Part shown: one piece after another, positions 19,652 to 34,290 of the stretch
Position numbering within the stretch: the stretch's first letter is position 1
Layout of the letters: the number at the start of each line of letters is the position of its first letter
Virus record (IMG/VR): IMGVR_UViG_3300033049_000066
Coordinates: 124,001-188,000 of that record
DNA: 64,000 nt
Direction: 5' to 3' (one strand)
Made by a program: the position numbers and the translations under genes
The notes under the pieces: model-generated
Database searches by the model: none
Told to the model about the DNA's origin: nothing
Seen by the model: only the letters and a program-made list of their open reading frames with translations

Positions 19652-19656
19652 AATTT

Positions 19657-19931: not shown

Positions 19932-19937
19932 AATTAC

Positions 19938-21506: not shown

Positions 21507-21514
21507 TCAAATTA

Positions 21515-21850: not shown

Positions 21851-21921
21851 GGGGGCATAGTATAACGGGATTACGGGGCGTTTGCAACGCTTTGATCGGA
21901 GTTCGATTCTCCGTGCCTCCA
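21851..21921 (+). tRNA. tRNA-Ala(TGC)
   Basis: G3-U70; ttTGCaa; CCA not encoded. Confidence 0.88.
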
Positions 21922-21929
21922 CAAATTTT

Positions 21930-22004
21930 AGGCCTGTAGTTCCAATCTGGTAGAACGGCGGATTCCAAACTCGCATGTTGGGGGTTCAAATCCCTCCGGG
22001 CCTG
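21930..22004 (+). tRNA. tRNA-Trp(CCA)
   Basis: AGGCCTG/CGGGCCT; ttCCAaa. Confidence 0.85.
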
Positions 22005-22045
22005 CACAAGAGTCTACATCAAGACTCGAACTGATAAATAAAAGT

Positions 22046-22723: not shown

Positions 22724-22796
22724 GAAAGTTGATAACCCCAGCGGGCTTTGAATCCACCGCCTAACAGCTCTGAGCGTTCGACTCGCTCCTTCTCAT
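22714..22796 (+). pseudogene. Degenerate tRNA-Gln(TTG) with long variable arm
   Basis: TGAGAAG/CTTCTCA and T arm intact; anticodon stem mismatched; no CCA. Confidence 0.6.
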
Positions 22797-22811
22797 CAAA
22801 GGCAGAGCATA

Positions 22812-22896
22812 GCCCCGGTGGCGGAATTGGTAGACGCGCTGGTTTTAGAAACCAGTACCGAAAGGTGTGCGGGTTCGAGTCCCGCCCAGGGCACCA
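22812..22896 (+). tRNA. tRNA-Leu(TAG)
   Basis: GGCGGAATTGGTAGACGC; ttTAGaa; CCA. Confidence 0.92.
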
Positions 22897-22945
22897 GACA
22901 ACGTTCTTATTGTGGATAAATAGTAATACACAATGAGGAAGTATT

Positions 22946-23212
22946 ATGATAGAAGCAGCAACATTTTTATTTTTCGGCGCAGGCATGTTCTTTTTAGGAC
23001 TAATGTGCTTTCCATTCGTTATGTTTTTACGTGCTCGCCGGGATGATTCCTGGGACGATTCAAACATGACAAATATCTTTAGACTGATCGCACATATTTC
23101 AGCGCATCCATCAGATTTTGGAAAAATGCAATACAAAGATGGCACGAAACCATTTTGGTATCTTAGCAAGGACGAACTGTCCGAAATAGTAAAAACTAGA
23201 CCACCCAAATAA
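22946..23212 (+). CDS. Membrane protein
   Basis: N-terminal TM; ATAAATA and GAGG upstream. Confidence 0.65.
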   Translation: MIEAATFLFFGAGMFFLGLMCFPFVMFLRARRDDSWDDSNMTNIFRLIAHISAHPSDFGKMQYKDGTKPFWYLSKDELSEIVKTRPPK

Positions 23213-23220
23213 ATTAATAT

Positions 23221-23295
23221 GCCCCCTAAGCATTGATGGCGATGCAGTGGTTTTGTAATCCGCAGAGGTCAGTTCAAGTCTGGCAGGGGGCTCCA
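23221..23295 (+). tRNA. tRNA-Thr(TGT)
   Basis: GCCCCCT/AGGGGGC; ttTGTaa; CCA. Confidence 0.88.
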
Positions 23296-23344
23296 AATAA
23301 AATATAATCAATAACCTGTAAATCAATAACCGATAAATATACGT

Positions 23345-23677
23345 ATGTGGTCTTTTATAAAATTAGGTGGGTGGGTTGTGATCTGGAGTGTTCTCTGGAT
23401 TTTTTTATTACCGTTCCGGAAGGGCAGGCACAATTGCTTAACATGGGCAGTTGAAAGATGGGACACTGAAGGCGGGTATTTAGTTATTCGGTGGTGCCGG
23501 TCAAACAACCAGCAGTGGTTAAAATGGCCACACTTCCTCTGGATGGACGAAAAAGAATATAAACGTGTGGAACATCTTATTCCGCATCCCGAAGACGCAA
23601 AGAAGCACACGTTACCTCGACCTTGGTTTGACGGTAGACACGCAAAGGCCGATCCAAAAGGTCAAAACGAAAACTAA
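23345..23677 (+). CDS. Hypothetical membrane-anchored protein
   Basis: ATAAATA upstream; N-terminal TM; NC...WPHF. Confidence 0.6.
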   Translation: MWSFIKLGGWVVIWSVLWIFLLPFRKGRHNCLTWAVERWDTEGGYLVIRWCRSNNQQWLKWPHFLWMDEKEYKRVEHLIPHPEDAKKHTLPRPWFDGRHAKADPKGQNEN

Positions 23678-23685
23678 ACAAATAC

Positions 23686-23772
23686 GGAAGATTGACAGAG
23701 TGGTAATGTGCCCGGTTGCTAACCGGCGGCTGTGGAAACGCAACGGAGGTTCAATTCCTCCATCTTCCGCCA
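23686..23772 (+). tRNA. tRNA-Ser(GCT)
   Basis: ttGCTaa; long variable arm; GCCA. Confidence 0.9.
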
Positions 23773-23780
23773 AAAATAAT

Positions 23781-23874
23781 GGAGAGGTGACAGAGTCTGG
23801 CTTATTGTTGCAGTCTTGAAAACTGCCGGTCGCAGTAGTGTGGCCCGTGGGTTCAAATCCCACCCTCTTCGCCA
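23781..23874 (+). tRNA. tRNA-Ser(TGA)
   Basis: ctTGAaa; long variable arm; GCCA. Confidence 0.9.
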
Positions 23875-23879
23875 AAAAT

Positions 23880-23963
23880 CCTGCCGAACCCAAACGGCTC
23901 GGGAGCGTCCTGATAAGGCGTCGGTGAAAATCGCAGTTGGTTCAACTCCAACCGGCAGGACCA
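23880..23963 (+). tRNA. tRNA-Ile(GAT) with long variable arm
   Basis: CCTGCCG/CGGCAGG; ctGATaa; CCA. Confidence 0.8.
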
Positions 23964-23969
23964 AATAAT

Positions 23970-24046
23970 GCACTTATAGCTCAGCCTGGTAGAGCGGATG
24001 ATTGAAGATCTTCGCGTCAGTGGTTCAAATCCACTTTTGTGCACCA
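23970..24046 (+). tRNA. tRNA-Phe(GAA)
   Basis: ttGAAga; two acceptor mismatches; CCA. Confidence 0.8.
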
Positions 24047-24057
24047 GTTTACAAATA

Positions 24058-24130
24058 GTGATGCCGTAGCTCAGTTTGGGAGAGCTCCTGCAATGTAGGG
24101 TGTCGTTGGTTCAAATCCAACTAGCATCGC
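24058..24130 (+). ncRNA. Anticodon-less tRNA-like RNA
   Basis: Normal D and T arms; CCTGC-aat-GTAGG 3-nt loop; no CCA. Confidence 0.6.
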
Positions 24131-24241
24131 GAGGCGAGGAAAAATGGATGGCAGTCTTAAATACTTGTCGAGAATCCCTTATCATTTGGCTCTGTCAGGT
24201 TGAATGGTTGGGGTAACTTATTTTAACTGATAAATAACTGT

Positions 24242-24634
24242 ATGAAAAGTGCAGAATTTATAGTAGAAGGTACAGAAATCGTTGTAGGCGATCAAGTCGT
24301 TGCGAAGCGTTCCGCTCGTGGTGGGGACTTGGGTCCAGCGATACACATGGCAGTGACAAAGGATGAGTGGGATCGTGTCAAAGGTCAACGTGCAAATACA
24401 GATATTCAATCCTACGATATTGCTACAGCTGAAACGATTGTCAATGACATGGTAAAGCAAGGTGGTGAGATCATATGGAAATCAGCAGCAGAATATAATG
24501 CTGATGCACGTGAACTTGAAAATCACAGATTTAGAAACAATGCTGATGTCCAAAGTGGATTTGCCGCAGCAATCAACAGCACACGTGATAACGCCAGCGC
24601 AACCGCAAAAGCGTCACTATCACGAATTAAATAA
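24242..24634 (+). CDS. Putative internal virion protein with capsid-targeting-like N-terminus
   Basis: MKSAEFIVE; ATAAATA upstream. Confidence 0.7.
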   Translation: MKSAEFIVEGTEIVVGDQVVAKRSARGGDLGPAIHMAVTKDEWDRVKGQRANTDIQSYDIATAETIVNDMVKQGGEIIWKSAAEYNADARELENHRFRNNADVQSGFAAAINSTRDNASATAKASLSRIK

Positions 24635-24641
24635 CAAATAT

Positions 24642-24728
24642 AGCGAAGTATACAAGCAGTCAAAGTACTGAGTCTCATAAGCTCAGCCCGAACGGGTTCG
24701 CAGGTGCAAATCCTGTCCTTCGCCTCCA
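24642..24728 (+). tRNA. tRNA-CAT (Met/fMet-like) with long variable arm
   Basis: ctCATaa; 1-72 mismatch; CCA. Confidence 0.75.
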
Positions 24729-24736
24729 AACAATAT

Positions 24737-24812
24737 GGTCCTTTAGCATAATTGGTAGTGCTGCCAACTCATAATTGGTAAAGTGTTGGATCGTAGCCAA
24801 CAAGGACCACCA
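24737..24812 (+). tRNA. tRNA-CAT (Ile2 or Met)
   Basis: GGTCCTT/AAGGACC; ctCATaa; CCA. Confidence 0.85.
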
Positions 24813-24818
24813 AGTAAT

Positions 24819-24894
24819 GCCCTCGTAAGTCAACTGGATAACGGCTGGTTTTCTACACCTCGCAATGGGAGTTCGAATCTCTCCTTGGGCGCCA
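24819..24894 (+). tRNA. tRNA-Arg(TCT), weak stems
   Basis: ttTCTac; T arm; GCCA. Confidence 0.65.
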
Positions 24895-24970
24895 AAGAAA
24901 ATAAAGAAAACAGAATTAAACTTGTATTTAGAGAATGGCTGGATACAAGGACGAACTATTAAAACTTAAT

Positions 24971-25045
24971 GCCCTGTCCGGCGGATAATCGGTGGCGAGT
25001 CTTCGAAACTTGCTTACAGTGGTTCAACTCCACTACAGGGCGCCA
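24971..25045 (+). tRNA. tRNA-Arg(TCG)
   Basis: GCCCTGT/ACAGGGC; ctTCGaa; CCA. Confidence 0.8.
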
Positions 25046-25061
25046 AATAATGACGTTAGTA

Positions 25062-25919
25062 CTAAGGGTTGATTTCTGGCGGCAGGGGTGCTGATATGAT
25101 TGCGGTAGGCACATAACTTCCAACCCCAACATAATTGTTTCCATGTGAATCTTTGTTTGTTGGGCGAGTGCTAGTAACAATCACGTCGTCTACATACGAA
25201 TTTTGTGTTTGGGGTGACCCTCTCGGAGTATCTGGAGTATCGTTCCAGTAAGTATAAATGTATAATGAATTAGCGTAATCTGTAGCTGCTCTAAAAGTTA
25301 CACGATTAGTAATGTCTTTCATCAGCTTACCGTTTTTCCACACTCGAACGCGACCAGTGCCACCGTTATCAACAGATTTTGTACCGAACTTAATATACAT
25401 CTCATAGGTTTCCCAGACGCCTAGTTTTATGACGTCGGAAGATGTTCCGAACTTAGTCCATCCTAAATCGGCTCTACTTGAACCTTCGTAAATAAATTGA
25501 AATGGTGGTACGCTACCTTTACGGTTAATATACCAATCATCATATCCGCCATTTGACCCGTCTTGCCTAAAAGTTTTAATGCGTAAGAATTTTAATCGAG
25601 TGCTTGCATTATAATCGAAACCAATCGGAAAGTAGTTTCGCATTCTTACCCATATCTCGTCGCCATTTTTTAATGTGCTAGGGAATTTAATAATACCGCC
25701 CCATTCACCAAATCCTCTGGATCCTTTGGCGATCCTAAGTTTGCATGATTTACTTTGACTAGCGGCAGCGGCACTACTAACAACTGACCTAGTTGAGCTC
25801 CAGCCTGCGCATTTTTCACCATTTGATTGAGAGTCAAAAGATTGATTTATAGTCCACGCATTTGCGGTACTTGCTAGCAAACTTGTAATTAATATTATTA
25901 TTTTAAAATAGGTTATCAT
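25062..25919 (-). CDS. Secreted polysaccharide-lyase-like beta-sandwich protein
   Basis: Signal ANA/W; WVR..YFP.GF, LKFLR, WETYEMY, GRVRVWKNG, YVDDVIV; paralog of 34310. Confidence 0.7.
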   Translation of the reverse strand: MITYFKIIILITSLLASTANAWTINQSFDSQSNGEKCAGWSSTRSVVSSAAAASQSKSCKLRIAKGSRGFGEWGGIIKFPSTLKNGDEIWVRMRNYFPIGFDYNASTRLKFLRIKTFRQDGSNGGYDDWYINRKGSVPPFQFIYEGSSRADLGWTKFGTSSDVIKLGVWETYEMYIKFGTKSVDNGGTGRVRVWKNGKLMKDITNRVTFRAATDYANSLYIYTYWNDTPDTPRGSPQTQNSYVDDVIVTSTRPTNKDSHGNNYVGVGSYVPTAIISAPLPPEINP

Positions 25920-25974
25920 ATTAGTATTTATTAGAGAATTTTTTATTAATGATTACACAACCATAAATAAATAT

Positions 25975-26346
25975 ATGAAATACATACACGGAACCATATA
26001 CGGAATAATACCAATACCAGTTTTTTATGTTGATGATTTAGACTGGGCAGCTGGTAGATCATACGGATTTTTCATCCGTATTAAAAAAGATTACAAAGAT
26101 GATCGCGGGCTGCTCGAACACGAACTACAGCATTGTCGACAATTTTACAGAACACTAATGCTACATCCACTTCTGTACAAGTTCTCTAAAACATACCGTT
26201 ACAATTCAGAACTTGAATGTTACAGAGTACAGCTATCGTTTTCGCAAAATAAAAATCGATCAGCAAAACATTTTGTAAAATACATAACAACTTGGTATAA
26301 GTTAGACGTGTTGCCCGGCAAGGCACTGAGTGATCTTTTAGATTAG
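25975..26346 (+). CDS. HEXXH zincin-like protein
   Basis: LLEHELQHCRQ...ELECY. Confidence 0.65.
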   Translation: MKYIHGTIYGIIPIPVFYVDDLDWAAGRSYGFFIRIKKDYKDDRGLLEHELQHCRQFYRTLMLHPLLYKFSKTYRYNSELECYRVQLSFSQNKNRSAKHFVKYITTWYKLDVLPGKALSDLLD

Positions 26347-26350
26347 TGCT

Positions 26351-26429
26351 GCCCTTGTATCCCCTCGGCCTCCTAAGCTGGTGAAAGGTAACTGGACACA
26401 TGCCGGTTCGACTCCGGCCAAGGGCACCA
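26351..26429 (+). tRNA. Non-canonical tRNA-Arg(CCT) lacking a normal D arm
   Basis: GCCCTTG/CAAGGGC-ACCA; CGGC-ctCCTaa-GCTG; perfect T arm. Confidence 0.65.
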
Positions 26430-26441
26430 ATTTAAAACCAG

Positions 26442-26516
26442 ACTAGCGTAACTCAGAGGCAGAGTAGGGGTGTTACATACCTCAAGTCGGGATTTCGAAA
26501 TTCCCCGCTAGTACCA
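26442..26516 (+). tRNA. tRNA-Val(TAC)
   Basis: ACTAGCG/CGCTAGT; gtTACat; CCA. Confidence 0.85.
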
Positions 26517-26631
26517 ATTTAATAACGTAGCTCAGCTGCTGAAAACAGCAATATAGATACGTATCCAAATTACTAGACATCATTTGTATTATACTGTATA
26601 ATGCATGCTTACATTAACAAAGGAAAACACA

Positions 26632-26847
26632 ATGTCAAAAAATAACAAAGTAACTAAAATTGCCGGGATCTTGCATACACAGAAAGTGGCATCGGCGTTT
26701 CGTGTTGGTAGTCGTAAGCTAGGAAAATCAGCACATGCTATGTCTAGCGATGCGCTATTATCTGTATTAGCAGACAAATCACAAAGCAAATTTCACAAAA
26801 GTGCGGCGGATGTCCTTAGTCTGCGTGGTGTAGATTTAACAGCATAA
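26632..26847 (+). CDS. Small basic protein
   Basis: AAGGA RBS; TAGACA-TATAAT promoter. Confidence 0.65.
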   Translation: MSKNNKVTKIAGILHTQKVASAFRVGSRKLGKSAHAMSSDALLSVLADKSQSKFHKSAADVLSLRGVDLTA

Positions 26848-26854
26848 CCAGAAT

Positions 26855-26929
26855 GGGATCGTAACTCAAGCGGCAGAGCCCCGACTCTTAATCGGCGAGA
26901 TGTGATTTCAATTATCACCGGTCCCACCA
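26855..26929 (+). tRNA. tRNA-Lys(CTT)
   Basis: ctCTTaa; CCA. Confidence 0.85.
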
Positions 26930-26944
26930 AATTTAATATAATAA

Positions 26945-27020
26945 GGGTTGCTAACTCAATTGGCAGAGTACTCGGCTTTTAACCGAGAAGTTCCCGGATC
27001 GTTGCCGGGGCAACCCGCCA
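26945..27020 (+). tRNA. tRNA-Lys(TTT)
   Basis: CTCGG-ctTTTaa-CCGAG; CCA. Confidence 0.9.
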
Positions 27021-27025
27021 AATAT

Positions 27026-27186
27026 AGGTGTATGGCGGAATTAGCAGACGCTAAGTTATACGCAATCTTACTAGACGAGCCGCAATATTAAATTTGGTAC
27101 TGCCTACTGAATTTTATTATTGTGAATGGATACAAGGGCAGCAAAACATGCTCGTCGTGCAGGTGCAACTCCTGCTACACCTACCT
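27026..27186 (+). ncRNA. tRNA-Leu-like RNA with a giant variable arm
   Basis: AGGTGTA/TACACCT; Leu-type D arm; GACGAGC(27074)/GCTCGTC(27150); T arm GCAGG-TGCAACT-CCTGC. Confidence 0.6.
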
Positions 27187-27195
27187 AATTTAGAA

Positions 27196-27218
27196 TAGTG
27201 CCCCGGACCGGGGCACTA
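27196..27218. terminator. Hairpin between convergent transcription units
   Basis: TAGTGCCCCG-gac-CGGGGCACTA. Confidence 0.65.
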
Positions 27219-27220
27219 AA

Positions 27221-28333
27221 TTACTCGAACGTAATAATTATATCGTTAATGATGTAGCCGCCTGTTTTCGTGTGCTTAAAGAGCAGCGTATTATCGCCAT
27301 CCTTCCAGTACGAAGATGGAACAGTAAATGATAGTGAGACTGTCTTAGCATCATGTACTGCGCCGCCTTCAATGCCGAACAATATAATAGCTGGGTTGCC
27401 GTTAATAATTAATTCACCTTCGTCCTTAAAGTCCGGGTCGGTTACATTTAATGTAATAATACTATTTGAAGTAGTACTTGGTTTGCTAACCGCAAATGTT
27501 ATTGTAGCTTCCTCAGGAGCTGTCGCTGATAAACTAACTGGCAATACACCGCTGTTGTCGATTACAATTGTTTCATCTACCTCAAACGTTACAGCTACAT
27601 TGTAAATTTTATAACCAGCTGTCTTTGTATGTTTGAAAAGCAATGTGTTATCGCCATCCTTCCAATATGCTGCTGGTGTAGCAAACGATATATTAACTCG
27701 CTTAGCATCATGTACTGCGCCGCCTTCGGAGCCGAACAATATAATAGCTGGGTTGCCGTTAATAATTAATTCACCTTCATCGATGAAATCTGGATCGTAA
27801 ACATCAAGCACCATTATTCCACTTATGGCGTTACTTGGCTTATTGACCGCAAGCGTTATTGTAAATTCTTGCGGCGCAGTACCTTCTAAATCAGCAAGTA
27901 CACCAGGTACTGTTGGTACAGTTGGTACAGTTGGTACACCAAACGTAAATGTTGGCTTAGATGGTTTTGATGTGTTAATAGTTGATCGCTGTATTTCATT
28001 ACTATATCGAGATACTCTATTTTGAGTATCAGTCGTTGTCATCACGAAATAATAATTTGTGGAAAACGGCAAATCAAGTGTTGCGGTTACGTCAGTATTT
28101 GACGAAATCCAAACCTTATCGTTATACACACCAGAAGTAGTTCCGTAATGTATAGAGTATCCTTTTATTTCACTTAGCGGAAGTGATTCCCAGGTGCTAC
28201 AGTTGCTGGCAGACGCACCCTTAGGTGCCGCACAGGCGTCTCGCTCAGTTGGAATTTCCCATTTTAAAGTAAAGGGGGTTGCACTAACGCTAACGGACAC
28301 TAATAAGAGAAGTAGGGCTAAAAAGTTTTTCAT
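27221..28333 (-). CDS. Secreted FN3-like protein with two repeated beta-sandwich domains
   Basis: Signal VSA/; LKWEIP..IKGYSIHYG..SRYSNE; duplicated DPDF.DEGELIINGNPAIILFG...WKDGDNTLLFKHTKT. Confidence 0.75.
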   Translation of the reverse strand: MKNFLALLLLLVSVSVSATPFTLKWEIPTERDACAAPKGASASNCSTWESLPLSEIKGYSIHYGTTSGVYNDKVWISSNTDVTATLDLPFSTNYYFVMTTTDTQNRVSRYSNEIQRSTINTSKPSKPTFTFGVPTVPTVPTVPGVLADLEGTAPQEFTITLAVNKPSNAISGIMVLDVYDPDFIDEGELIINGNPAIILFGSEGGAVHDAKRVNISFATPAAYWKDGDNTLLFKHTKTAGYKIYNVAVTFEVDETIVIDNSGVLPVSLSATAPEEATITFAVSKPSTTSNSIITLNVTDPDFKDEGELIINGNPAIILFGIEGGAVHDAKTVSLSFTVPSSYWKDGDNTLLFKHTKTGGYIINDIIITFE

Positions 28334-28388
28334 TTAAATACCCCCTTAAACCATGAAAGAAGAGCGTTTATCCTTTCAAGGAGTCTTA

Positions 28389-28718
28389 TTAGCTCGCTGT
28401 AAAATTTACAGGTATGCTCGGTTCGACAGCTATAACAAATTCTAATTGCGCCCAGTCACTAGTAATACCGTTAATGTCAACTTCGCGCACACCAGCTGTC
28501 CAGTTACCAGCTTCAATTGGATTAGCCAGATCGGATATTGGTGCTACAAAAGATTGACTATTGGATATAACACCCATGATTATATTAAAATCGCTATCAG
28601 GAGCGCCAGTTGGCTTAATTGCTAAATCATAGCCTTTACGCTGTGAAGCGTCATATGTGCTTGAGTCAACGCGAGTTGTTGCGCCGTCCCAGGTAAATTC
28701 AGTTGGATTGATTATCAT
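28389..28718 (-). CDS. FN3/Ig-like small protein
   Basis: FTWD...GYDL...GNW..VREVD.NG..SDW; ATAAATA upstream. Confidence 0.6.
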   Translation of the reverse strand: MIINPTEFTWDGATTRVDSSTYDASQRKGYDLAIKPTGAPDSDFNIIMGVISNSQSFVAPISDLANPIEAGNWTAGVREVDINGITSDWAQLEFVIAVEPSIPVNFTAS

Positions 28719-28761
28719 TTTATTTTCCTATGTGATGTAACTATTTATCGTCTCTTACAAA

Positions 28762-29349
28762 TTACCAGGGAATTAATGATATTAATTTGTTAATGAAAGA
28801 TTTTTTAGTAGTCTTCATTGCTCTGTAACGTTCCCAGTCAAACAGTTTGCCGGGGTCTGTTTTACGCCTTGGTGACACATGATCGTGCCCGGCGATGTTC
28901 GCGACTGGGAATTTGTAAGTACGAAGTAATTCTTCGGTTAGTTCAATAAGTGCATCGTACTGCGCATCAGTATAGCCGCTTTCTTGGGTGGCAATCAGCT
29001 CGATGCCAAGCATCCAATTATTGCAATTGTCGTACCCGAGCCAGCGTGAACGACCAGCATGCCAGGCCTTCATCGGCAGTGGAACAAGATCGTAAACTGT
29101 ACCGTCTCGAGATATCATGTAGTGCGCAGATGCGTACATGCGATTAGGCAAATCTTTCATCTTAAACCACTTGCGATCTTTTTCCGGACGGTTTAAATCC
29201 TTAAATAATTGAATACATTTTTCAGGGTTAAATGGTTCGTCCGGAAACTGATACTTGCCACTGAAATAGTGAATTACAATGCCGTTAACTACTTTCATCT
29301 TAGATGAACTATAGCAATAATCTGGAAGCTTTTCGATAACTTTTTTCAT
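28762..29349 (-). CDS. N-acetylmuramoyl-L-alanine amidase (Amidase_2/AmpD-like), probable endolysin
   Basis: IVIHY, SAHY, AWHAG, GIEL, GHDHVSPRRKTDPG. Confidence 0.9.
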   Translation of the reverse strand: MKKVIEKLPDYCYSSSKMKVVNGIVIHYFSGKYQFPDEPFNPEKCIQLFKDLNRPEKDRKWFKMKDLPNRMYASAHYMISRDGTVYDLVPLPMKAWHAGRSRWLGYDNCNNWMLGIELIATQESGYTDAQYDALIELTEELLRTYKFPVANIAGHDHVSPRRKTDPGKLFDWERYRAMKTTKKSFINKLISLIPW

Positions 29350-29413
29350 TTTTGGACTCCTATCGAGTATTTATTAGGTTGACAAACAGGCAGGAAAATT
29401 ATATAATATATAG

Positions 29414-29887
29414 ATGATAAATCAAATTACAGGTAATTTATTTTCAGTAAAAGAAGGCTACATTATACACGGGTGCAACGCACAAGGTGTAATGGGTGCT
29501 GGGGTCGGGAGGACTATGAAATTCACATACCCGGGCGCATACAACATATATAAAAATTACATCAACAAAGCACGTGAATTAGGTGTATCCCCACTGGGAT
29601 CAAATACATATTATGCCATGAACAAATTAGTTATTATTAACGCTGTGACACAAGAATACTACGGAAATGACGGAAAGCAATACACCGATTATGATGCTGT
29701 TCGTGCTTGTTTTTATGATATAAATGCAGAAATTTTGCGATCACAAGAAATATTTGATAATATTCCCCGAGTGCTTAACTTTCCGATGATTGGATGTGGC
29801 TTTGGTGGTGGCAACTGGGAAGTTATAGAAGCTATCATAGAAAAAGAAATTAATAATAGTTTTGAAATGGTCTTATGGACTTTATAG
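29414..29887 (+). CDS. Macro-domain (Appr-1-p/ADP-ribosylglycohydrolase-like) protein
   Basis: GNLF..IIHGCNAQGVMGAGV..PMIGCGFGGGNW. Confidence 0.9.
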   Translation: MINQITGNLFSVKEGYIIHGCNAQGVMGAGVGRTMKFTYPGAYNIYKNYINKARELGVSPLGSNTYYAMNKLVIINAVTQEYYGNDGKQYTDYDAVRACFYDINAEILRSQEIFDNIPRVLNFPMIGCGFGGGNWEVIEAIIEKEINNSFEMVLWTL

Positions 29888-29898
29888 ATACTGAATAA

Positions 29899-29985
29899 CC
29901 CTCGGTGATGAAATTGGTAAACATAGAAGATTTAAAATCTTCCGCCTGAACAGGCTTGCGGGTTCAACTCCCGCCTGAGGGACCA
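29899..29985 (+). tRNA. tRNA-Leu(TAA)
   Basis: GAAGA-ttTAAaa-TCTTC; CCA. Confidence 0.9.
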
Positions 29986-29991
29986 AACAAT

Positions 29992-30088
29992 CCAAAGATT
30001 ACGCCGATTCTCCGCGGAACGGTGAATGGATGCCTCGCTTAGGCGCAGGCTGTGAATAACGTTGGTTTGACTCCAACTCTTTGGGCCA
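29992..30088 (+). ncRNA. tRNA-like RNA with acceptor, T arm and CCA but aberrant D and anticodon arms
   Basis: CCAAAGA/TCTTTGG-GCCA; GTTGG-TTTGACT-CCAAC. Confidence 0.55.
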
Positions 30089-30127
30089 ATTTAAAAGTGT
30101 ACTTAGGGGTGGTTGAATGTGCAAAGG

Positions 30128-30201
30128 GGCGACTTTAGCTTAATGGTAAAGCCCTCGGTTGTGATCCGAAAAGATGCGAGTTCGAATCTTCGTAGGTCGC
30201 C
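30128..30201 (+). tRNA. tRNA-His(GTG) inside a 34-bp flanking stem
   Basis: G-1:C73; ttGTGat; no CCA. Confidence 0.85.
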
Positions 30202-30262
30202 CCTTTGCGCATTCAACCACCCCTAAGTACATTTACGTTACAACACATGATAAATACTTACT

Positions 30263-30484
30263 ATGAAAGCAAATGAAATTATGCACGAAAGAACTAGTAA
30301 CCGCATTAAGGTACAAATGCACGAATACGGACCTATTGGTAATCGAAAATATTCATTAGTGGATATGCGAACTCGTAAGACACGAGCTACATCGTTCAAC
30401 GGACAGTTTGAGGCGAAAGCATACGCAAACAAAAGGAATTGGTTTATTAGCCCCGTTAATATAATCGAACCCGTTTCCAATTAA
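30263..30484 (+). CDS. Small putative internal virion protein
   Basis: MKANEIMHE; ATAAATA upstream. Confidence 0.6.
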   Translation: MKANEIMHERTSNRIKVQMHEYGPIGNRKYSLVDMRTRKTRATSFNGQFEAKAYANKRNWFISPVNIIEPVSN

Positions 30485-30574
30485 TCAAGTTAACCTAAAT
30501 ACTAGACATTAGTCCTAAACGATAGTATAATTGTACAAAGAATCATATACAATTTAACACTAACCAGGACCTCT

Positions 30575-31735
30575 ATGAAAACAAAATTCATGATCGGCGG
30601 TGATACCGTACACGTATTCAATATGAACGAAGAACTAGCGTTGGATAAACTCCCGCCACGGATCTACACCGTCCGGTTTGACCCACTACAGGGCTTTCAT
30701 CTTGGCATCACAAAAGATAAGCTTGACTTGCCTAGTAAGATTTACGGTGAGACTCCAATGCGTGTACAAAAGTGTATAGATACATATACCGATCGTACTG
30801 CATCTACCGGCATTTTATTAACCGGTGATAAAGGTACAGGCAAAACATTATTGATGTCGTTGCTTGCAAATGAAATAATTAGCAAATTAAAATTGCCAGT
30901 AATACTCATTAAAGAGGCATACGAAGGTGGTGCGTTTACAAACTTCATTGAATCCATTGGCGAATGCGCTCTTGTGTTTGACGAATTCGGGAAAATGTAT
31001 TGTCCAAATTCGAGACGCAACGAGAATGATATACCTCAAACCTCATTATTATCATTAATGGATGGGGTTGACAAAACCAAGCGTATGTTTATTTTGACTG
31101 AAAACAGCGAGCTGGACATCAACGACTTCATGCTAAATCGTCCGAGTCGCATCTACTATCACTTCAAGTACAACAAGCTTGACGAAGGCAGCGTCATCGG
31201 CTACTGCGAGGATTATAAGGTCGGCACCGAGGAGATAAGAGATATCGTAGATCTTGCTCGGCGCTCACAGGTTTTTAGCTTCGATATGCTCCAGACTATC
31301 GTCGAGGAGCACCAGCGTTACGGTACGTCAATAGGCGAGGTTGCGGAAGATTTAAATATCGACACGCGCGAAGAACAGGGCGATATGATTGAGGTGCTAA
31401 AAATACTCGAGCGTGGCACGAAAAATGAGCGTGAGATCTATGGCACGCCGTACGTCACAAAACCTAACAGTAGCTACACGTACATCAACATCAAGGATAA
31501 TAAAATTGAAAGTTCTGAGGTTGAGATGCCAACTGCAACGGCAGTGGATAGCACTGATAGCAGCGAAGATAGCCCTGTATGCGCAAGCGAGGAAAATAAC
31601 TATCGCTCCGAGTACGTCGAGGCGAAGAACTTAGCTTACGAAAAAGATGGGCAGCTGGTTTACGAAACAGAAAAATTCACCTTCATCGCAAAAGATATGC
31701 CCAAGCTTCAAACAAATTATTTGAAATTTTTCTAG
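30575..31735 (+). CDS. AAA+ ATPase
   Basis: GDKGTGKT, LVFDEFGK, LLSLMDG, NRPSR. Confidence 0.9.
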   Translation: MKTKFMIGGDTVHVFNMNEELALDKLPPRIYTVRFDPLQGFHLGITKDKLDLPSKIYGETPMRVQKCIDTYTDRTASTGILLTGDKGTGKTLLMSLLANEIISKLKLPVILIKEAYEGGAFTNFIESIGECALVFDEFGKMYCPNSRRNENDIPQTSLLSLMDGVDKTKRMFILTENSELDINDFMLNRPSRIYYHFKYNKLDEGSVIGYCEDYKVGTEEIRDIVDLARRSQVFSFDMLQTIVEEHQRYGTSIGEVAEDLNIDTREEQGDMIEVLKILERGTKNEREIYGTPYVTKPNSSYTYINIKDNKIESSEVEMPTATAVDSTDSSEDSPVCASEENNYRSEYVEAKNLAYEKDGQLVYETEKFTFIAKDMPKLQTNYLKFF

Positions 31736-31744
31736 GTAAACGAA

Positions 31745-32137
31745 ATGCGCACTAAATTATTAATTCTTGTAACTTTAACAGCACCACTATTTTTAATTGA
31801 CTGGTCGGCCAAGGAGAAGAGTTCCGGTGGTGAGGTCGACGCACTTTACTGGCACGGAGGGAGTCGCTACACCGTGAAGGACGACAATGGGGGCCTGATC
31901 ACAAGCAGAACGATACCGCCCTGGGGTAGTCCACACAACGGCAATGTCATTGTGTACAGTGATCTTGCTCCGGGAGAAAAAACTTGGTATCTCTGTGAGT
32001 GGGATTGGAGTTGGATGTACGGCACGATGGGTGGGGATGCGAATTGTGAAATTCACATTCACGGACTAGATGATATCATCCCCGGTAATTGGGATCATGG
32101 CAAATTTGGCAGAGGGTCAATCACACGCATAGAATAA
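31745..32137 (+). CDS. Membrane-anchored hypothetical protein
   Basis: Hydrophobic N-terminus; WDHGKFGRG. Confidence 0.65.
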   Translation: MRTKLLILVTLTAPLFLIDWSAKEKSSGGEVDALYWHGGSRYTVKDDNGGLITSRTIPPWGSPHNGNVIVYSDLAPGEKTWYLCEWDWSWMYGTMGGDANCEIHIHGLDDIIPGNWDHGKFGRGSITRIE

Positions 32138-32157
32138 AATATCGCCAAAAAGAATAC

Positions 32158-32233
32158 AGTGACATAGCTCAATTGGCAGAGCACGAAGCTCATAACTTCG
32201 AAGACGCAGGATCGTTGCCTGCTGTCACTACCA
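32158..32233 (+). tRNA. tRNA-Met(CAT)
   Basis: AGTGACA/TGTCACT; ctCATaa; CCA. Confidence 0.88.
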
Positions 32234-32270
32234 GACACTGAACAAATAGCAGTTAACTGCAGGAGGTAAC

Positions 32271-32747
32271 ATGTTCACCGTAGATGAAAAAACAGAAATA
32301 GTACAGTACTTAAAAGATATGCCCGCGAATTCCTCAGTGTATATCGGTTCTGACTCCGTGAAATACAAACGCAAGGGGTTATGGTACGCTCGGTACAACG
32401 TAGCATTCATTGTCCACATTGCATCAAAGCACGGTGGTAAGATTTTTCACACTACATCTGTCGAACGTGATTACGATCCTAAGAAGGAAAAGCCTCGTAT
32501 GCGACTAATGACCGAAGTATACAAAGCCGTAGGTGTTTACATGGAATTCGCGGAGGTACTTGAAGATTTACCTGTCGAAATCCACATCGATGTTAATTCA
32601 GATGAGAAGCACAACTCCAGCATCGTGCTGCGAGAAGCACTTGGCTACATCAAAGGAATGACCGGACTAGATGGAGTGCCTAAGCCAGATGCCTGGGCCG
32701 CATCGACGGTTAGTGATTACGGTGCCAGAGGGAAATTTACACACTAA
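32271..32747 (+). CDS. RNase H-like YkuK-family protein
   Basis: VYIGSDS, RLMTEV, EIHIDVN, KPDAWAAS..SD. Confidence 0.85.
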   Translation: MFTVDEKTEIVQYLKDMPANSSVYIGSDSVKYKRKGLWYARYNVAFIVHIASKHGGKIFHTTSVERDYDPKKEKPRMRLMTEVYKAVGVYMEFAEVLEDLPVEIHIDVNSDEKHNSSIVLREALGYIKGMTGLDGVPKPDAWAASTVSDYGARGKFTH

Positions 32748-32776
32748 GGATTCAATCGCGCAAGGATGCGCATTTT

Positions 32777-32852
32777 GCCGTCGTAGCTCAGTTGGTAGAG
32801 CGCAGACCTGGTACGTCTGAGGTCATCGGTTCAACCCCGATCGTCGGCTCCA
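32777..32852 (+). tRNA. tRNA-Thr(GGT)
   Basis: CAGAC-ctGGTac-GTCTG; CCA. Confidence 0.9.
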
Positions 32853-32892
32853 ATTTTAGATGCATTATAATGCTCGTATGATAAATACCGTT

Positions 32893-33876
32893 ATGCCAAG
32901 ACATAAAAAAATCGCGCAAAGACATGCGAAAATTCTTAATATACAGAATCCCGCAACAGGGAAATTTGAGTTAGATAAAATTAAAACAAAATACGATAGA
33001 ATCCTTAAATACTCATTTGCGGAAATATATATTATAGACGCTGGAACTATGAAGTTCACCGAAGTCAGCGCAAACGCACTGCGGAACCTCGGCTACACGC
33101 TGGCGGAGATGCAGAAGATGAAGGCTGGTGACGTCGCACCTCAGCTTTCTGCCGGGCAATGTAACAAGATTTTTGTTGCGTTGAACAGTGGGGAAAATGA
33201 GGTCGCGAAGATGAAAACAGTTATTTTGCGCAAAGATGGATCAGAGTACAAAGTTAATCTTCGCGTACAGTACGCGAGTGGTGAAGACCCAGTGTACATC
33301 ATAATGGCGTCGGACATCACAGAACGTGACAGGTACGAAGCTGAGTTAAAAGCCCTTGCCTTCCGAGACCCCGGCACAGATTTGTACAATAGACGGTACT
33401 TCTTAGAACACCTTAGGGGAACGATAAACCATGCTAACAGAATGCACTCTCCTATTGGATTAATTTTAATCGACATGGATGATTTTAGTAAGGTCAATAA
33501 CAATTACGGACACATCGCTGGTGACAAGGTAATCTCAGATTTTGCAAATAAGATATGCGATGTATTTTCAAGGAAGACAGACGTCGTAGCAAGATACGGT
33601 GGGGATGAATTTGTAGTGCTGTGTATCGACAATTCCGCTGAAACATTAATCGCAAAATGTAACCAGCTTATAGCTCGACTAAACAAAGCATTGTACTACG
33701 ACGGTCACACAATTGTCCAAACCGCAAGCATAGGCATTTGCCACTACAACGCGAATGCTATAACAATCTCAACTGAGGATCTTATTAACGGTGCTGACAT
33801 TGCTATGTACAAGGCCAAGGCAGCTGGTAAAAATCAAGTCAAAATATGTAACAACGACGACCTCAATGAGGATTAA
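32893..33876 (+). CDS. PAS-GGDEF diguanylate cyclase
   Basis: PAS (..RKDGS..DITE), NRRYF, IDMDDF..VNN.YGH.AGD, RKTD I-site, RYGGDEF; start placed after ATAAATA. Confidence 0.92.
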   Translation: MPRHKKIAQRHAKILNIQNPATGKFELDKIKTKYDRILKYSFAEIYIIDAGTMKFTEVSANALRNLGYTLAEMQKMKAGDVAPQLSAGQCNKIFVALNSGENEVAKMKTVILRKDGSEYKVNLRVQYASGEDPVYIIMASDITERDRYEAELKALAFRDPGTDLYNRRYFLEHLRGTINHANRMHSPIGLILIDMDDFSKVNNNYGHIAGDKVISDFANKICDVFSRKTDVVARYGGDEFVVLCIDNSAETLIAKCNQLIARLNKALYYDGHTIVQTASIGICHYNANAITISTEDLINGADIAMYKAKAAGKNQVKICNNDDLNED

Positions 33877-33894
33877 TGGCAATAATATTTAGGA

Positions 33895-34205
33895 ATTACT
33901 ATTTGAAGCTAAAGTAGGTTATCACGGACAAGGGTGCAAATCCCTTCATTTCCACCAAAAGCATCTTTTTACAAGGGTTCTTTTGGGGGATGATTTCAGA
34001 TTCGACGTGGGACTGAGGATAAGTGGATAGTACGGCAACGCAGAAGTCGTGACACTTGAAGAAGCAAACTTAAAATAATCGCAAACGATTCATTTTACAC
34101 TGAGGAATTAATGGCTGCGTAAAGCGCCACCCTCTGAGGTTGAAACAGCCTTATAACCAGCTTGTTAGTCGTGCCCTATTGACGAATGAACACAATGTAG
34201 GGGAC
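33895..34205 (+). ncRNA. ssrA: Circularly permuted (two-piece) tmRNA; tag ANDSFYTEELMAA*; outer boundaries approximate
   Basis: T arm + CATTTCC-ACCA (ends 33957) lies upstream of GGGGATG...GATTCGAC (33986); tag at 34081-34122. Confidence 0.88.
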
Positions 34206-34216
34206 GCGATACTTTT

Positions 34217-34290
34217 GACTCTATAGCATAATGGCAGTGCGAGGGATTGCAAATCCTTAGATCCCGATTCGACTTCGGGTAGAGTCTCCA
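34217..34290 (+). tRNA. tRNA-Cys(GCA)
   Basis: GACTCTA/TAGAGTC; ttGCAaa; U73-CCA. Confidence 0.9.

What the first reader, a model, noticed from the sequence alone, without database searches (positions are those of the whole stretch)
33895..34205. Phage-encoded circularly permuted (two-piece) tmRNA
Seen: the tmRNA 3' module (CACGGAC, T arm AAGGG-TGCAAAT-CCCTT, CATTTCC-ACCA ending 33957) lies upstream of the 5' module GGGGATG..GATTCGAC-GTG (33986). The two form an acceptor stem with G3-U70. The 28-nt spacer between them folds as a hairpin. A resume context ATAATC-GCA opens the tag ANDSFYTEELMAA* (34081-34122). Known: two-piece tmRNAs occur in alphaproteobacteria, some betaproteobacteria and marine cyanobacteria. 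A permuted one inside a phage tRNA island is unusual and is easily missed. It may be an independent permutation, or it may not match the host form.
Basis: partly seen in the sequence, partly recalled or inferred. Interest (0 to 1): 0.8.

Follow-up and report, generated by a model that had tools for sequence, protein, structure and literature searches.

The report
Jumbo-phage two-piece tmRNA, beta type
A large marine phage carries, inside its tRNA gene array, a complete circularly permuted (two-piece) tmRNA gene of the known betaproteobacterial type; this kind of gene is already documented in phages, but here it is embedded among tRNAs, shared by a phage lineage, and its front half looks swapped or remodelled.

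Summary
Rfam tmRNA_permuted (RF04321) matches window 33897-34122 end to end (81.7 bits; threshold 47). ARAGORN calls the same permuted gene and the same tag, ANDSFYTEELMAA, but only below its default cutoff.

It is not a new kind. Permuted tmRNAs are published for phages and abundant in IMG/VR (at least 120 hits). It is not an independent permutation: sequence profiles and trees place it with beta-type genes.

What is new:
- The gene is conserved at one syntenic position (GGDEF gene, tmRNA, tRNA) in related metagenomic phage contigs, with tags ANDSFYIEDLMVA and ANDSFYLEMAA. Most tag differences are synonymous.
- It lies inside a 25-tRNA array and abuts a tRNA; none of 104 other viral permuted tmRNAs has a tRNA within 1 kb.
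- It is mosaic. The 3' (mRNA-like) half is about 80% identical to lineage relatives. The 5' (tRNA-like) half is about 60% identical to anything and has a weak P2 helix.

The host, and so any host-form mismatch, remains unknown. Processing, charging and tagging are untested. Verdict: new member of a known kind, moderate-to-low interest.

The parts
32860..33876 (+). PAS-GGDEF diguanylate cyclase gene. It is the upstream syntenic anchor of the tmRNA locus in this phage lineage.
   Evidence: Pfam GGDEF 4e-41. Homologs at 50-96% identity lie on related contigs with the same gene order.
33877..33896 (+). Leader. It holds a remnant of the beta-type ssrA promoter -10 region (TAGGAAT, 33890-96, against TAGAAT in relatives) and a -10-like TAATAT (33883-88) placed correctly for a start near 33896. 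Both are unverified.
   Evidence: Read from the sequence and from the alignment with L182/L176/L188. The promoter scan called nothing here.
33897..33957 (+). Acceptor piece: P2 5' strand (33897-33925), GGAC, T-arm (33930-33946), acceptor 3' strand with U70 (33951), A73, and the encoded CCA that ends at 33957.
   Evidence: Rfam RF04321 alignment: T-arm 5/5 and acceptor 7/7 pairs are standard. ARAGORN 3' tRNA domain.
33958..33985 (+). Intervening sequence (28 nt), predicted to be removed on maturation. It folds as a weak hairpin.
   Evidence: Fold -3.3 kcal/mol, z -2.0. 28-29 nt is the modal spacer length in viral permuted tmRNAs. It is 68-72% identical to the spacers of L216/L182/L176/L188.
33986..34067 (+). 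5' part of the coding piece: acceptor 5' strand GGGGATG (G3 = 33988), the D-loop analogue with UUCGAC, the P2 3' strand (outer helix ATAGTA, 34027-32) and the PK1 hairpin (34033-36 / 34046-49). Together with the acceptor piece this forms the divergent '5' module'.
   Evidence: Rfam alignment; folds; segment identities.
34068..34122 (+). Resume context (UAAUC before GCA 34081) and the tag reading frame ANDSFYTEELMAA, with stop UAA at 34120-22. This is the start of the conserved '3' module'; the 18-mer 34068-34085 is identical in lineage relative L232.
   Evidence: ARAGORN tag call. Codon comparison shows mostly synonymous differences.
34113..34128 (+). Helix 5: a hairpin with the stop codon in its loop.
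   Evidence: Folds; consensus of alignment A2.
34135..34167 (+). Post-tag module. Either a 9-bp hairpin (34135-42 / 34146-53) plus a 4-bp hairpin (34154-57 / 34164-67), or the eroded beta-type pseudoknot (S1 UGAGG/CCUUA, S2 AACAG/UUGUU, loop 3 UAACCAGC).
   Evidence: Nearly invariant in 5 lineage members. The outer pair is C-G in relatives and U-A in the window, a compensatory change. Pseudoknot parse and position weight matrix.
34168..34216 (+). Terminal long hairpin (34168-34209) plus a 7-nt U-rich tail. This is the predicted 3' end of the coding piece.
   Evidence: Three pairs show compensatory changes across the lineage. It does not meet the terminator consensus.
34217..34290 (+). tRNA-Cys(GCA), abutting the tmRNA. 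RNase P cleavage at its 5' end would release the 3' end of the coding piece.
   Evidence: ARAGORN and Rfam tRNA, 62.4 bits. A tRNA abuts the tmRNA in 4 of 5 distinct lineage members.
18923..34290 (+). tRNA array: 25 tRNA genes, all on the + strand. The tmRNA is its second-to-last RNA gene.
   Evidence: ARAGORN; Rfam.

Best explanation
What it is: a functional, phage-borne two-piece tmRNA (ssrA) gene of the betaproteobacterial permuted type. It is carried in the tRNA array of an uncultivated marine jumbo phage (293 kb, a distant relative of Pseudomonas phage PA5oct).

Predicted pathway (inferred, not shown):
1. The gene is transcribed together with the neighbouring tRNAs.
2. Host RNase P cuts 5' of G33986 and 5' of tRNA-Cys (34217). 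Host nucleases trim the 28-nt spacer back to the encoded CCA at 33957.
3. This yields an acceptor piece of about 61 nt and a coding piece of about 225 nt, held together by the 7-bp acceptor stem and helix P2.
4. Host AlaRS charges it through G3-U70/A73.
5. Host SmpB and EF-Tu bring it to ribosomes stalled on broken mRNAs. Translation resumes at GCA 34081 and adds (A)ANDSFYTEELMAA. The ribosome is released at UAA and the tagged protein goes to host proteases.

Likely benefit: keeping the ribosome pool free during infection, alongside the phage's own tRNA set.

History: the gene was inherited within a phage lineage. In this particular phage the tRNA-like 5' module (and the upstream Acb1-family gene seen in relatives) has been replaced by recombination with another beta-type tmRNA gene, or was remodelled rapidly.
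For: Identity as a permuted tmRNA:
- RF04321 full length, 81.7 bits.
- ARAGORN 'Permuted' call with the same tag.
- G3-U70, A73, CCA and a standard-paired T-arm and acceptor stem.

Beta type:
- nhmmer beta profile 87.9 bits, spanning the tRNA-like domain through the post-tag region, against 49.0 bits for the alpha profile over the tRNA-like half only.
- Tree placement among beta-typed genes.

Lineage conservation:
- The same syntenic slot holds a tmRNA in L227, L228/L229, L230, L232 and L234.

Selection on the tag as a translated frame:
- Differences are mostly synonymous (AAC/AAT, TAC/TAT, TTA/CTA, GAG/GAA, GCN), and the indel is an in-frame 2 codons.

Selection on structure:
- Compensatory pairs in the post-tag hairpin and the terminal hairpin.
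- The T-stem is AAGGG/CCCUU against GCGGG/CCCGC in relatives; the outer P2 and PK1 stems are complementary with different sequences.
- The window agrees with 79% of columns invariant among relatives, falling to 26% at variable columns.

Mosaic:
- 3' half: clade with the lineage 99/99, window branch 0.056.
- 5' half: branch 0.78.
- Differences to L228 are 39% (5') against 15% (3'), Fisher p 3e-5, while among relatives the 5' half is no less conserved than the 3' half.

Other:
- A tRNA abuts the tmRNA in 4 of 5 distinct members.
- Real DNA.
Against: - There is no RNA evidence: no RNA run was listed. Processing, charging and tagging are untested.
- The window's P2 helix is weak. 3 of 15 modelled pairs are non-standard. 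The fold does not recover P2, although it does in every relative. Cofold energy is no better than shuffles (z -0.42).
- The post-tag pseudoknot is eroded. Its PWM score is 7.6 bits against 9.6-20.1 in relatives, and its pairing score is matched by 131 of 300 shuffles.
- It falls below ARAGORN's default cutoff and below all three lineage-specific Rfam thresholds.
- No promoter or terminator consensus is found at the locus.
- No phage SmpB gene, so the RNA must work with an unknown host's SmpB.
- The AU test does not reject a common origin of the 5' half with the lineage relatives (p 0.23), so recombination is not proven.
- Close relatives such as G001 lack the gene, so it is dispensable.
Confidence: 0.68

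Rival explanations
1. This particular copy is a decaying or crippled tmRNA. The lineage's gene is functional, but in this phage the event that changed the 5' module left a weak P2 helix and an eroded pseudoknot. The RNA would then be poorly folded, processed or charged, and on its way to loss.
For: - P2 is not recovered by folding, unlike in all relatives.
- Cofold z is -0.42.
- It has the lowest RF04321 score of all the genes compared, and is sub-threshold for ARAGORN and for the alpha, beta and cyano models.
- The 5'-half branch is 0.78.
- Relatives such as G001, L236 and L237 have lost or never had the gene.
Against: - All charging determinants are intact, as are the T-arm (through paired changes), the acceptor stem, the resume context and the tag frame.
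- The stems of the 5' module are complementary despite about 40% divergence, which random decay would not preserve.
- The 3' half is nearly unchanged (branch 0.056).
- The identical sequence is present at high depth in two runs and in a further contig.
Confidence: 0.2
2. The RNA acts mainly as a decoy or inhibitor. Its tRNA-like part would titrate host SmpB or AlaRS and shut down host trans-translation, as proposed for the tRNA-like-domain-only molecule of mycobacteriophage DS6A, rather than rescuing ribosomes.
For: [quoted passage not shown]
- The phage has no SmpB gene of its own.
Against: The gene keeps a complete coding part. The tag frame shows a synonymous-substitution pattern, and the resume context and stop-codon hairpin are conserved across the lineage. 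A decoy would not need these.
Confidence: 0.06
3. It is an independent (fourth) circular permutation of a tmRNA gene that arose in phages, unrelated to the alpha, beta and cyanobacterial permuted lineages.
For: No lineage-specific Rfam model reaches its threshold: beta 35.7, alpha 33.3, cyano 23.0 bits, and all three match only the tRNA-like core.
Against: - The beta sequence profile aligns from the tRNA-like domain through the tag to the post-tag region at 87.9 bits.
- The lineage relatives score 88-110 bits on the beta profile.
- Both halves fall among beta-typed genes on trees.
- The spacer length and termini, the leader (AGAATT..TGAAG) and the post-tag CCUU(G/A)UAACC loop are shared with beta-type genes.
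Confidence: 0.03
4. It is not a phage gene in its own right: either a piece of host ssrA picked up at an integration site (an attP-like fragment) or a chimeric assembly.
For: tmRNA genes are common integration sites, and prophages can carry ssrA fragments (PMC4383910; PMC9004378).
Against: - The gene is complete rather than a 3' fragment.
- No integrase is found in the 293-kb contig.
- The locus is contiguous in independent assemblies.
- It lies in conserved synteny in at least 5 distinct related phage contigs.
Confidence: 0.02

Closest known systems
Betaproteobacterial two-piece tmRNA (Rfam beta_tmRNA RF01850; Sharkady & Williams 2004, as cited in PMC9004378), including copies on aquatic phage contigs such as L188, L176, L182 and L216
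   Same: - Gene order: acceptor piece, spacer, coding piece.
- Spacer of 28-29 nt beginning AAAGCAU.
- Helix P2 followed directly by the PK1 hairpin.
- A tag of the AND... type ending in AA.
- A post-tag module with S1 GRGG/CCUY and loop 3 (G/A)UAACC.
- A final hairpin.
- The beta profile scores 87.9 bits.
   Different: - Only 35.7 bits on RF01850 (threshold 84), and only over the tRNA-like core.
- AU-rich, weak P2.
- Extra G4-U69 wobble.
- Stem 2 of the pseudoknot is reduced to 5 weak pairs, or replaced by a simple hairpin.
- No recognisable promoter of its own.
- It lies in a tRNA array and abuts a tRNA.
Phage-encoded two-piece tmRNAs of marine myophages: OM43 phage Melnitz, pelagimyophages and cyanophages (Buchholz et al. 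2022, PMC9004378)
   Same: A complete permuted ssrA gene carried by a lytic-type marine phage without an integrase. The proposed role is to maintain the hijacked translation machinery.
   Different: - In Melnitz the gene is described as alpha-related, carries a glutamine riboswitch in its 3' domain, and sits behind an early promoter next to a transcription coactivator gene.
- Here the type is beta, no riboswitch was detected by Rfam, and the context is a tRNA array of a jumbo phage.
- None of 104 IMG/VR permuted tmRNAs has a tRNA within 1 kb.
   Same: A very large phage genome that combines many tRNAs with a tmRNA. Phosso is among the terminase relatives of this phage (49% identity) and has a permuted tmRNA (113 bits).
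   Different: - Phosso's gene is alpha type (108 bits), matching its alphaproteobacterial host, spans about 600 nt, and is not next to tRNAs.
- I take the Bxz1-group and phage G tmRNAs to be standard one-piece forms from my own knowledge; the paper read does not state their form.
- Some huge phages also encode SmpB; this one does not.

Membership tests
tmRNA, circularly permuted form (Rfam tmRNA_permuted RF04321) | Score at or above the family's gathering threshold over the full model | tested here: met
   81.7 bits against a threshold of 47, model positions 1-213 of 213, E 4e-14.
tmRNA, circularly permuted form (Rfam tmRNA_permuted RF04321) | Permuted gene order: the 3' half of the tRNA-like domain (T-arm, acceptor 3' strand, CCA) lies upstream of the 5' half (GGGG..., UUCGAC), separated by a spacer | tested here: met
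   Positions 33926-33957, then a 28-nt spacer, then 33986-34006.
tmRNA, circularly permuted form (Rfam tmRNA_permuted RF04321) | Alanine identity elements: G3-U70 in a 7-bp acceptor stem, discriminator A73, and a 3' CCA | tested here: met
   G33988-U33951, A33954, CCA 33955-57. All 7 acceptor pairs are standard. Their role in AlaRS recognition is established knowledge and was not tested here.
tmRNA, circularly permuted form (Rfam tmRNA_permuted RF04321) | Helix P2 joining the two pieces | tested here: inconclusive
   12 of 15 modelled pairs are standard, and the outer 6-7 bp are recovered by cofolding. However, the minimum-energy fold does not give P2, although it does in all relatives, and the cofold z-score is -0.42.
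tmRNA, circularly permuted form (Rfam tmRNA_permuted RF04321) | Resume codon in a conserved context, followed by a short tag frame ending in a hydrophobic residue plus Ala-Ala and a stop codon | tested here: met
   UAAUC|GCA, then ANDSFYTEELMAA*. The frame is conserved across 5 lineage genes with mostly synonymous differences.
tmRNA, circularly permuted form (Rfam tmRNA_permuted RF04321) | Pseudoknot PK1 upstream of the resume codon | tested here: inconclusive
   The first stem is present (34033-36 / 34046-49). I could not identify the second stem by inspection, and no covariation test was possible.
tmRNA, circularly permuted form (Rfam tmRNA_permuted RF04321) | Maturation into two RNA pieces; alanylation; SmpB-dependent tagging of stalled nascent chains | not testable with these tools
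   No RNA run holding the locus was listed. Experiments are needed.
Betaproteobacterial two-piece tmRNA (Rfam beta_tmRNA RF01850) | Score at or above the gathering threshold (84 bits) over the full model | tested here: not met
   35.7 bits, model positions 78-165 only. By Rfam's criterion it is therefore not a member of this sub-family, although its ancestry is beta-like.
Betaproteobacterial two-piece tmRNA (Rfam beta_tmRNA RF01850) | Sequence closer to beta-type than to alpha-type genes along the whole gene | tested here: met
   nhmmer beta profile 87.9 bits (profile positions 39-259) against alpha 49.0 bits (tRNA-like half only). Lineage relatives score 88-110 against 27-40 bits. Trees.
Betaproteobacterial two-piece tmRNA (Rfam beta_tmRNA RF01850) | Post-tag H-type pseudoknot with a conserved CCUUGUUACC-like segment | tested here: inconclusive
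   The topology can be drawn: S1 UGAGG/CCUUA, S2 AACAG/UUGUU. Its score of 21 is matched by 131 of 300 shuffles, and the PWM score is 7.6 bits, rank 55 of 127,976. A plain hairpin is an equally good reading.
Alphaproteobacterial two-piece tmRNA (Rfam alpha_tmRNA RF01849) | Score at or above the gathering threshold (50 bits) | tested here: not met
   33.3 bits, model positions 86-169 only.
Cyanobacterial two-piece tmRNA (Rfam cyano_tmRNA RF01851) | Score at or above the gathering threshold (70 bits) | tested here: not met
   23.0 bits, model positions 54-122 only.

The most novel reading that the evidence does not exclude
Phage tmRNA genes may evolve by exchange of whole modules. Here the tRNA-like module (acceptor piece, spacer, 5' acceptor strand, P2 and PK1) would have been swapped in from another phage's or a host's beta-type ssrA. 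The mRNA-like module (resume context, lineage-specific acidic tag ANDSFY..., post-tag structures) stayed. In beta-type genes the two modules make no base pairs with each other, which would make such a swap tolerable. If so, a phage could re-fit the charging and SmpB-binding end of its tmRNA to a new host while keeping its own tag. In addition, embedding in a tRNA array would let RNase P define the ends of the coding piece. That would be a maturation route different from the stand-alone, promoter-and-terminator genes of bacteria.
Probability: 0.3. Interest if true: 0.55.

Novelty: new member of a known kind. Interest (0 to 1): 0.35.

Why it matters
The finding adds a well-documented case, and a small family of at least four distinct gene versions, of a beta-type two-piece tmRNA carried by marine jumbo phages inside their tRNA arrays.

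It matters in four modest ways:
- **Annotation.** Standard pipelines (default ARAGORN, lineage-specific Rfam models) miss such genes. The new merged Rfam model finds them. An isolate phage (Phosso) also has an unannotated one.
- **Phage biology.** The gene extends the picture of large phages that bring a near-complete translation toolkit (tRNAs plus ribosome rescue). It also offers a natural pair of variants, one with a canonical and one with a remodelled tRNA-like module, for testing what a phage tmRNA needs in order to work with host AlaRS and SmpB.
- **Evolution.** The discordant histories of the two halves suggest modular exchange of tmRNA parts. To my knowledge this has not been described for permuted tmRNAs; I did not search the literature exhaustively for it.
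- **Host prediction.** The tmRNA type may serve as a host hint: Phosso's alpha type matches its host. Melnitz shows the hint can mislead.

Tried and rejected
Searches that found nothing:
- megablast and blastn of the locus against GenBank phages: no match; the window's own record may be masked.
- Exact and degenerate DNA patterns for this tmRNA or its tag in IMG/VR: nothing.
- The window's T-loop plus acceptor combination in 185k species genomes: none. With the T-loop left free there were only two hits, both beta-type MAGs.
- RNA sequencing runs holding the locus: none listed.
- Acb1 in the phage's own genome: empty, but the control rang nowhere, so this is uninformative.
- Typing the lineage relatives through the genome search: those records are not held. 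I replaced this with nhmmer profiles.

Leads that proved false or unhelpful:
- The closest complete relative, G001, has no permuted or standard tmRNA. A weak tag-like hit in G001 was a chance match inside a coding region.
- The GGDEF gene was first used with the search for related loci in IMG/VR and gave only one distant hit. The protein database plus look-up of encoding contigs was what uncovered the lineage.
- RNAalifold on a MAFFT alignment of post-tag regions from 23 beta-type genes gave no structure, because the stems were out of register. I replaced it with an explicit pseudoknot parser.
- Thermodynamic significance of the two-piece cofold and of the pseudoknot: not significant. I do not use energy as evidence.

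Ideas rejected or left open:
- The G55 T-loop and the 28-nt spacer as 'defects': rejected. G55 is the majority state among viral permuted tmRNAs (79 of 120), and 28-29 nt is the modal spacer length.
- L216 and L182 as possible host contigs: rejected. They carry T4-like phage genes.
- Host identification: not achieved.
- A formal test of recombination: the AU test is not significant (p 0.23), so the mosaic is stated as likely, not shown.
Full report
**1. The observation**

- GGAC is at 33926-29. The T-arm is AAGGG/TGCAAAT/CCCTT (33930-46).
- The acceptor 3' strand CATTTCC is at 33947-53, A73 at 33954 and the encoded CCA at 33955-57.
- A 28-nt spacer follows, then GGGGATG (33986-92) and GATTCGAC.
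- The two acceptor strands make seven standard pairs, with G3 (33988) opposite U70 (33951) and a second wobble, G4-U69.
- The frame that opens at GCA 34081 after ATAATC reads ANDSFYTEELMAA and stops at 34120-22.

Rfam 15's merged model for permuted tmRNAs (RF04321) matches 33897-34122 over its whole length at 81.7 bits (threshold 47; E 4e-14 for the window). It is the best RNA hit in the window, ahead of all tRNAs. ARAGORN finds 25 tRNAs but no tmRNA at its default cutoff. At 90% of the cutoff it reports a 'Permuted' tmRNA with the same two tRNA-domain halves and the same tag. The spacer hairpin is real but weak (-3.3 kcal/mol, z -2.0).

The arrangement is not an assembly artefact. Contigs from two seawater DNA runs each carry the 3-kb stretch in one piece with 0-1 differences. 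An independent JGI contig, L227, is 100% identical over the gene.

**2. The genome**

The window is part of a 293,278-bp IMG/VR viral contig (41.6% G+C, linear, CheckV 83% complete).
- Its large terminase is 53% identical to the PA5oct group of Pseudomonas jumbo phages. It is 49-53% identical to Sinorhizobium phage Phosso and Agrobacterium phage Atu_ph07.
- Closer relatives exist only as metagenomic contigs.
- The genome has no integrase and no SmpB.
- The tmRNA is the second-to-last RNA gene of a 15-kb array of 25 tRNA genes, all on the + strand. It lies between a PAS-GGDEF gene (32860-33876) and tRNA-Cys (34217-34290).

**3. How unusual the class is**

The class is not unusual.
- Buchholz et al. 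2022 (PMC9004378) described a two-piece tmRNA in OM43 phage Melnitz. They counted 53 ARAGORN two-piece tmRNAs among 402 tmRNA-bearing isolate phages, 50 of them marine or aquatic.
- The 2025 tmRNA database paper (PMC11915505) lists 79 phage sequences and is the source of model RF04321.
- Huge phages are reported to carry tmRNAs and SmpB (PMC7162821). The Sinorhizobium jumbo phage AP-J-162 has 66 tRNAs and a tmRNA (PMC11242549).
- In that set a G at T-loop position 55 is the majority state (79 of 120), and a 28-29-nt spacer is the mode. The window's 'odd' T-loop and short spacer are therefore normal for viral copies.
- Phosso, an isolate, has a permuted alpha-type tmRNA (113 and 108 bits) in an unannotated gap. 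This matches the lineage of its host. PA5oct and Atu_ph07 have none.

**4. Which lineage it belongs to**

The three lineage-specific Rfam models cannot decide. Beta scores 35.7, alpha 33.3 and cyano 23.0 bits. All three cover only the roughly 85-nt tRNA-like core, and all are below threshold.

Other evidence points to the beta type:
- The only species genomes with a permuted gene and the same acceptor stem are two beta-type MAGs, one Rhodocyclales and one Gallionellaceae.
- On a tree of 90 permuted genes the window falls in an 18-row clade whose typed members are all beta. It sits on a very long branch, and the support is 93 SH-aLRT.
- Profiles built from Rfam-typed genes score the window at 87.9 bits (beta, aligned from the tRNA-like domain through the tag into the post-tag region) against 49.0 bits (alpha, tRNA-like half only).

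An independent permutation event is therefore not supported.

**5. The lineage**

The decisive step was the neighbouring GGDEF protein. It has homologs of 50-96% identity on many metagenomic contigs. The contigs I fetched share the window's gene order: AAA ATPase, RNaseH-like, tRNA-Thr, GGDEF.

In five of them a permuted tmRNA occupies the same slot, after GGDEF and usually after an Acb1-family gene, and before a tRNA:
- L227 is identical to the window.
- L228 and L229 have the tag ANDSFYIEDLMVA.
- L230, L232 and L234 have the tag ANDSFYLEMAA.

The slot is empty in L236, L237 and the complete 344-kb relative G001.

The tag frames differ mostly by synonymous changes (AAC/AAT, TAC/TAT, TTA/CTA, GAG/GAA, GCG/GCT/GCC) and by an in-frame two-codon indel. 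That is the signature of a translated frame.

The 60 nt after the tag are almost invariant, although the GGDEF proteins are only about 57-64% identical. The post-tag hairpin has an outer pair that is C-G in the relatives and U-A in the window. The terminal hairpin has three pairs with compensatory changes.

In four of five distinct members a tRNA starts within about ten bases of the terminal hairpin. Among 104 other viral permuted tmRNAs, none has a tRNA within 1 kb. The tRNA-array context is what is really unusual here.

**6. The mosaic**

Compared with its lineage relatives, the window's gene falls into two parts.
- **From 34068 onward** (resume context, tag, post-tag structures) it is 75-83% identical to them and 56-63% identical to other beta-type genes.
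- **Upstream of 34068**, the tRNA-like 3' domain is 88% identical to L216 but 69-75% identical to the lineage. The spacer is 28 nt and 68-72% identical to those of L216, L182, L176 and L188, whereas the lineage has spacers of 70-105 nt (22-31% identical). The P2/PK1 region resembles nothing closely.
- **Trees agree.** In the 3' half the window joins the lineage (99/99) with a terminal branch of 0.056. In the 5' half its branch is 0.78, and the four relatives form a 98/99 clade without it.
- **Rate asymmetry.** Differences to L228 are 58 of 149 positions in the 5' half against 17 of 112 in the 3' half (p 3e-5). Among the relatives the 5' half is the more conserved one.
- **Limit.** The AU test does not reject a tree that keeps the window with the lineage in the 5' half (p 0.23).

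I therefore rate replacement of the 5' module by recombination with an unsampled beta-type gene as likely (about 0.6) and not shown. The alternative is a burst of change.

The leader of the window still resembles the -10 region of stand-alone beta-type genes (TAGGAAT against TAGAAT, followed by ..TGAAG). The Acb1-family gene present in relatives is missing at this position. Both fit a single replacement event. L216 and L182, the nearest matches to the 5' module, are themselves T4-like phage contigs, so they do not identify a host.

**7. Whether this copy is in working order**

For:
- All elements needed for charging are intact.
- The T-stem differs from the relatives at two pairs, with both sides changed in each (AAGGG/CCCUU against GCGGG/CCCGC).
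- The outer P2 (UACUAU/AUAGUA against AGCAU/AUGCU) and the PK1 stem (ACGGC/GUCGU against GAAGG/CCUUC) are complementary with different sequences.
- Agreement with the relatives falls from 79% at invariant columns to 26% at variable ones.

Against:
- P2 is AU-rich, with 3 of 15 modelled pairs non-standard.
- Folding recovers P2 in every relative but not in the window.
- The cofold energy is ordinary.
- The beta-type pseudoknot after the tag is eroded, or replaced by two hairpins.

I conclude that the gene is probably functional (about 0.68), with a real chance (about 0.2) that this copy is impaired.

**8. Mechanism**

Shown:
- The gene's anatomy.
- Its conservation within a phage lineage.
- Coding-type constraint on the tag.
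- Compensatory changes in several stems.

Inferred from established knowledge of tmRNA-SmpB trans-translation and of two-piece tmRNA maturation (Keiler et al. 2000, as cited in PMC9004378 and PMC11915505):
- Co-transcription with the tRNAs.
- RNase P cuts at 33985/33986 and at 34216/34217.
- Trimming of the spacer to CCA.
- Pairing of the two pieces.
- Alanylation through G3-U70.
- Delivery by SmpB and EF-Tu.
- Tagging with (A)ANDSFYTEELMAA, followed by proteolysis.

Not testable here: every biochemical step, and the identity of the host.

**9. Verdict**

It belongs to a kind that is already known, both as a permuted tmRNA and as a phage-borne one. It is beta-like in ancestry but too divergent to pass the beta sub-family threshold. 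The new details are lineage conservation, embedding in a tRNA array, and a mosaic or remodelled 5' module. They make it a useful but not surprising case. No step had to be referred.

Noticed in passing
G000:C1:114659-114732 (about 9.3 kb upstream of the window start; outside the window): ARAGORN calls a tRNA with anticodon TTA, which would read the UAA stop codon (a suppressor-type tRNA), in the same phage genome.
   Followed up: no
window 32860-33876; relatives L228, L230, L234, L236, L238: A PAS-GGDEF diguanylate cyclase gene is conserved across this jumbo-phage lineage (50-96% identity). In relatives it is followed by an Acb1-family (PF23474, anti-CBASS-type) gene that is missing at this place in the window. 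A search of the phage's own genome for Acb1 was empty, but the control search rang nowhere.
   Followed up: partly
window 19466-19551 and 22714-22797; also 24060-24129 and 26351-26426: Two tRNA-Gln(TTG) genes are 84-86 nt long, which is unusually long for tRNA-Gln. Two further Rfam tRNA hits are not called by ARAGORN.
   Followed up: no
window 34310-35128 and 27221-28333: ORFs resembling polysaccharide lyases or carbohydrate-binding modules lie inside or next to the tRNA array. They may be depolymerase-type genes and could hint at a capsulated or alginate-producing host.
   Followed up: no
window 46429-47508 and 48787-50253: NAD salvage genes are present: a cytidylyltransferase-like/NUDIX (NMNAT-type) protein and a nicotinamide phosphoribosyltransferase.
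   Followed up: no
L226 5554-6243 (PV764938.1 349596-350198, Sinorhizobium phage Phosso): An alpha-type permuted tmRNA (RF04321 113 bits, alpha_tmRNA 108 bits) spans about 600 nt, which implies a long insertion. It lies in an unannotated gap of the GenBank record.
   Followed up: partly
loci L082-L201 (IMG/VR): On the tree of viral permuted tmRNAs, genes typed 'alpha' and 'beta' by Rfam interleave within one large marine clade. Rfam subtype labels may therefore be unreliable for marine phage tmRNAs. Some encode very long tags, for example 30 residues in L152 and 33 in L184.
   Followed up: no
L228 about 4890-4935: After the tmRNA of L228 there is only the first ~22 nt of the tRNA-Gln that follows the tmRNA in L230, and then an ORF. 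The tRNA appears to have been truncated by an insertion.
   Followed up: no
L238/L239 638-720 (G001, the 344-kb relative): At a relaxed ARAGORN threshold a tRNA with anticodon CTA (amber-reading, labelled 'Pyl') and tRNAs with unusual anticodons (ATT, ATA) are called in the relative's tRNA array. These are low-confidence calls.
   Followed up: no
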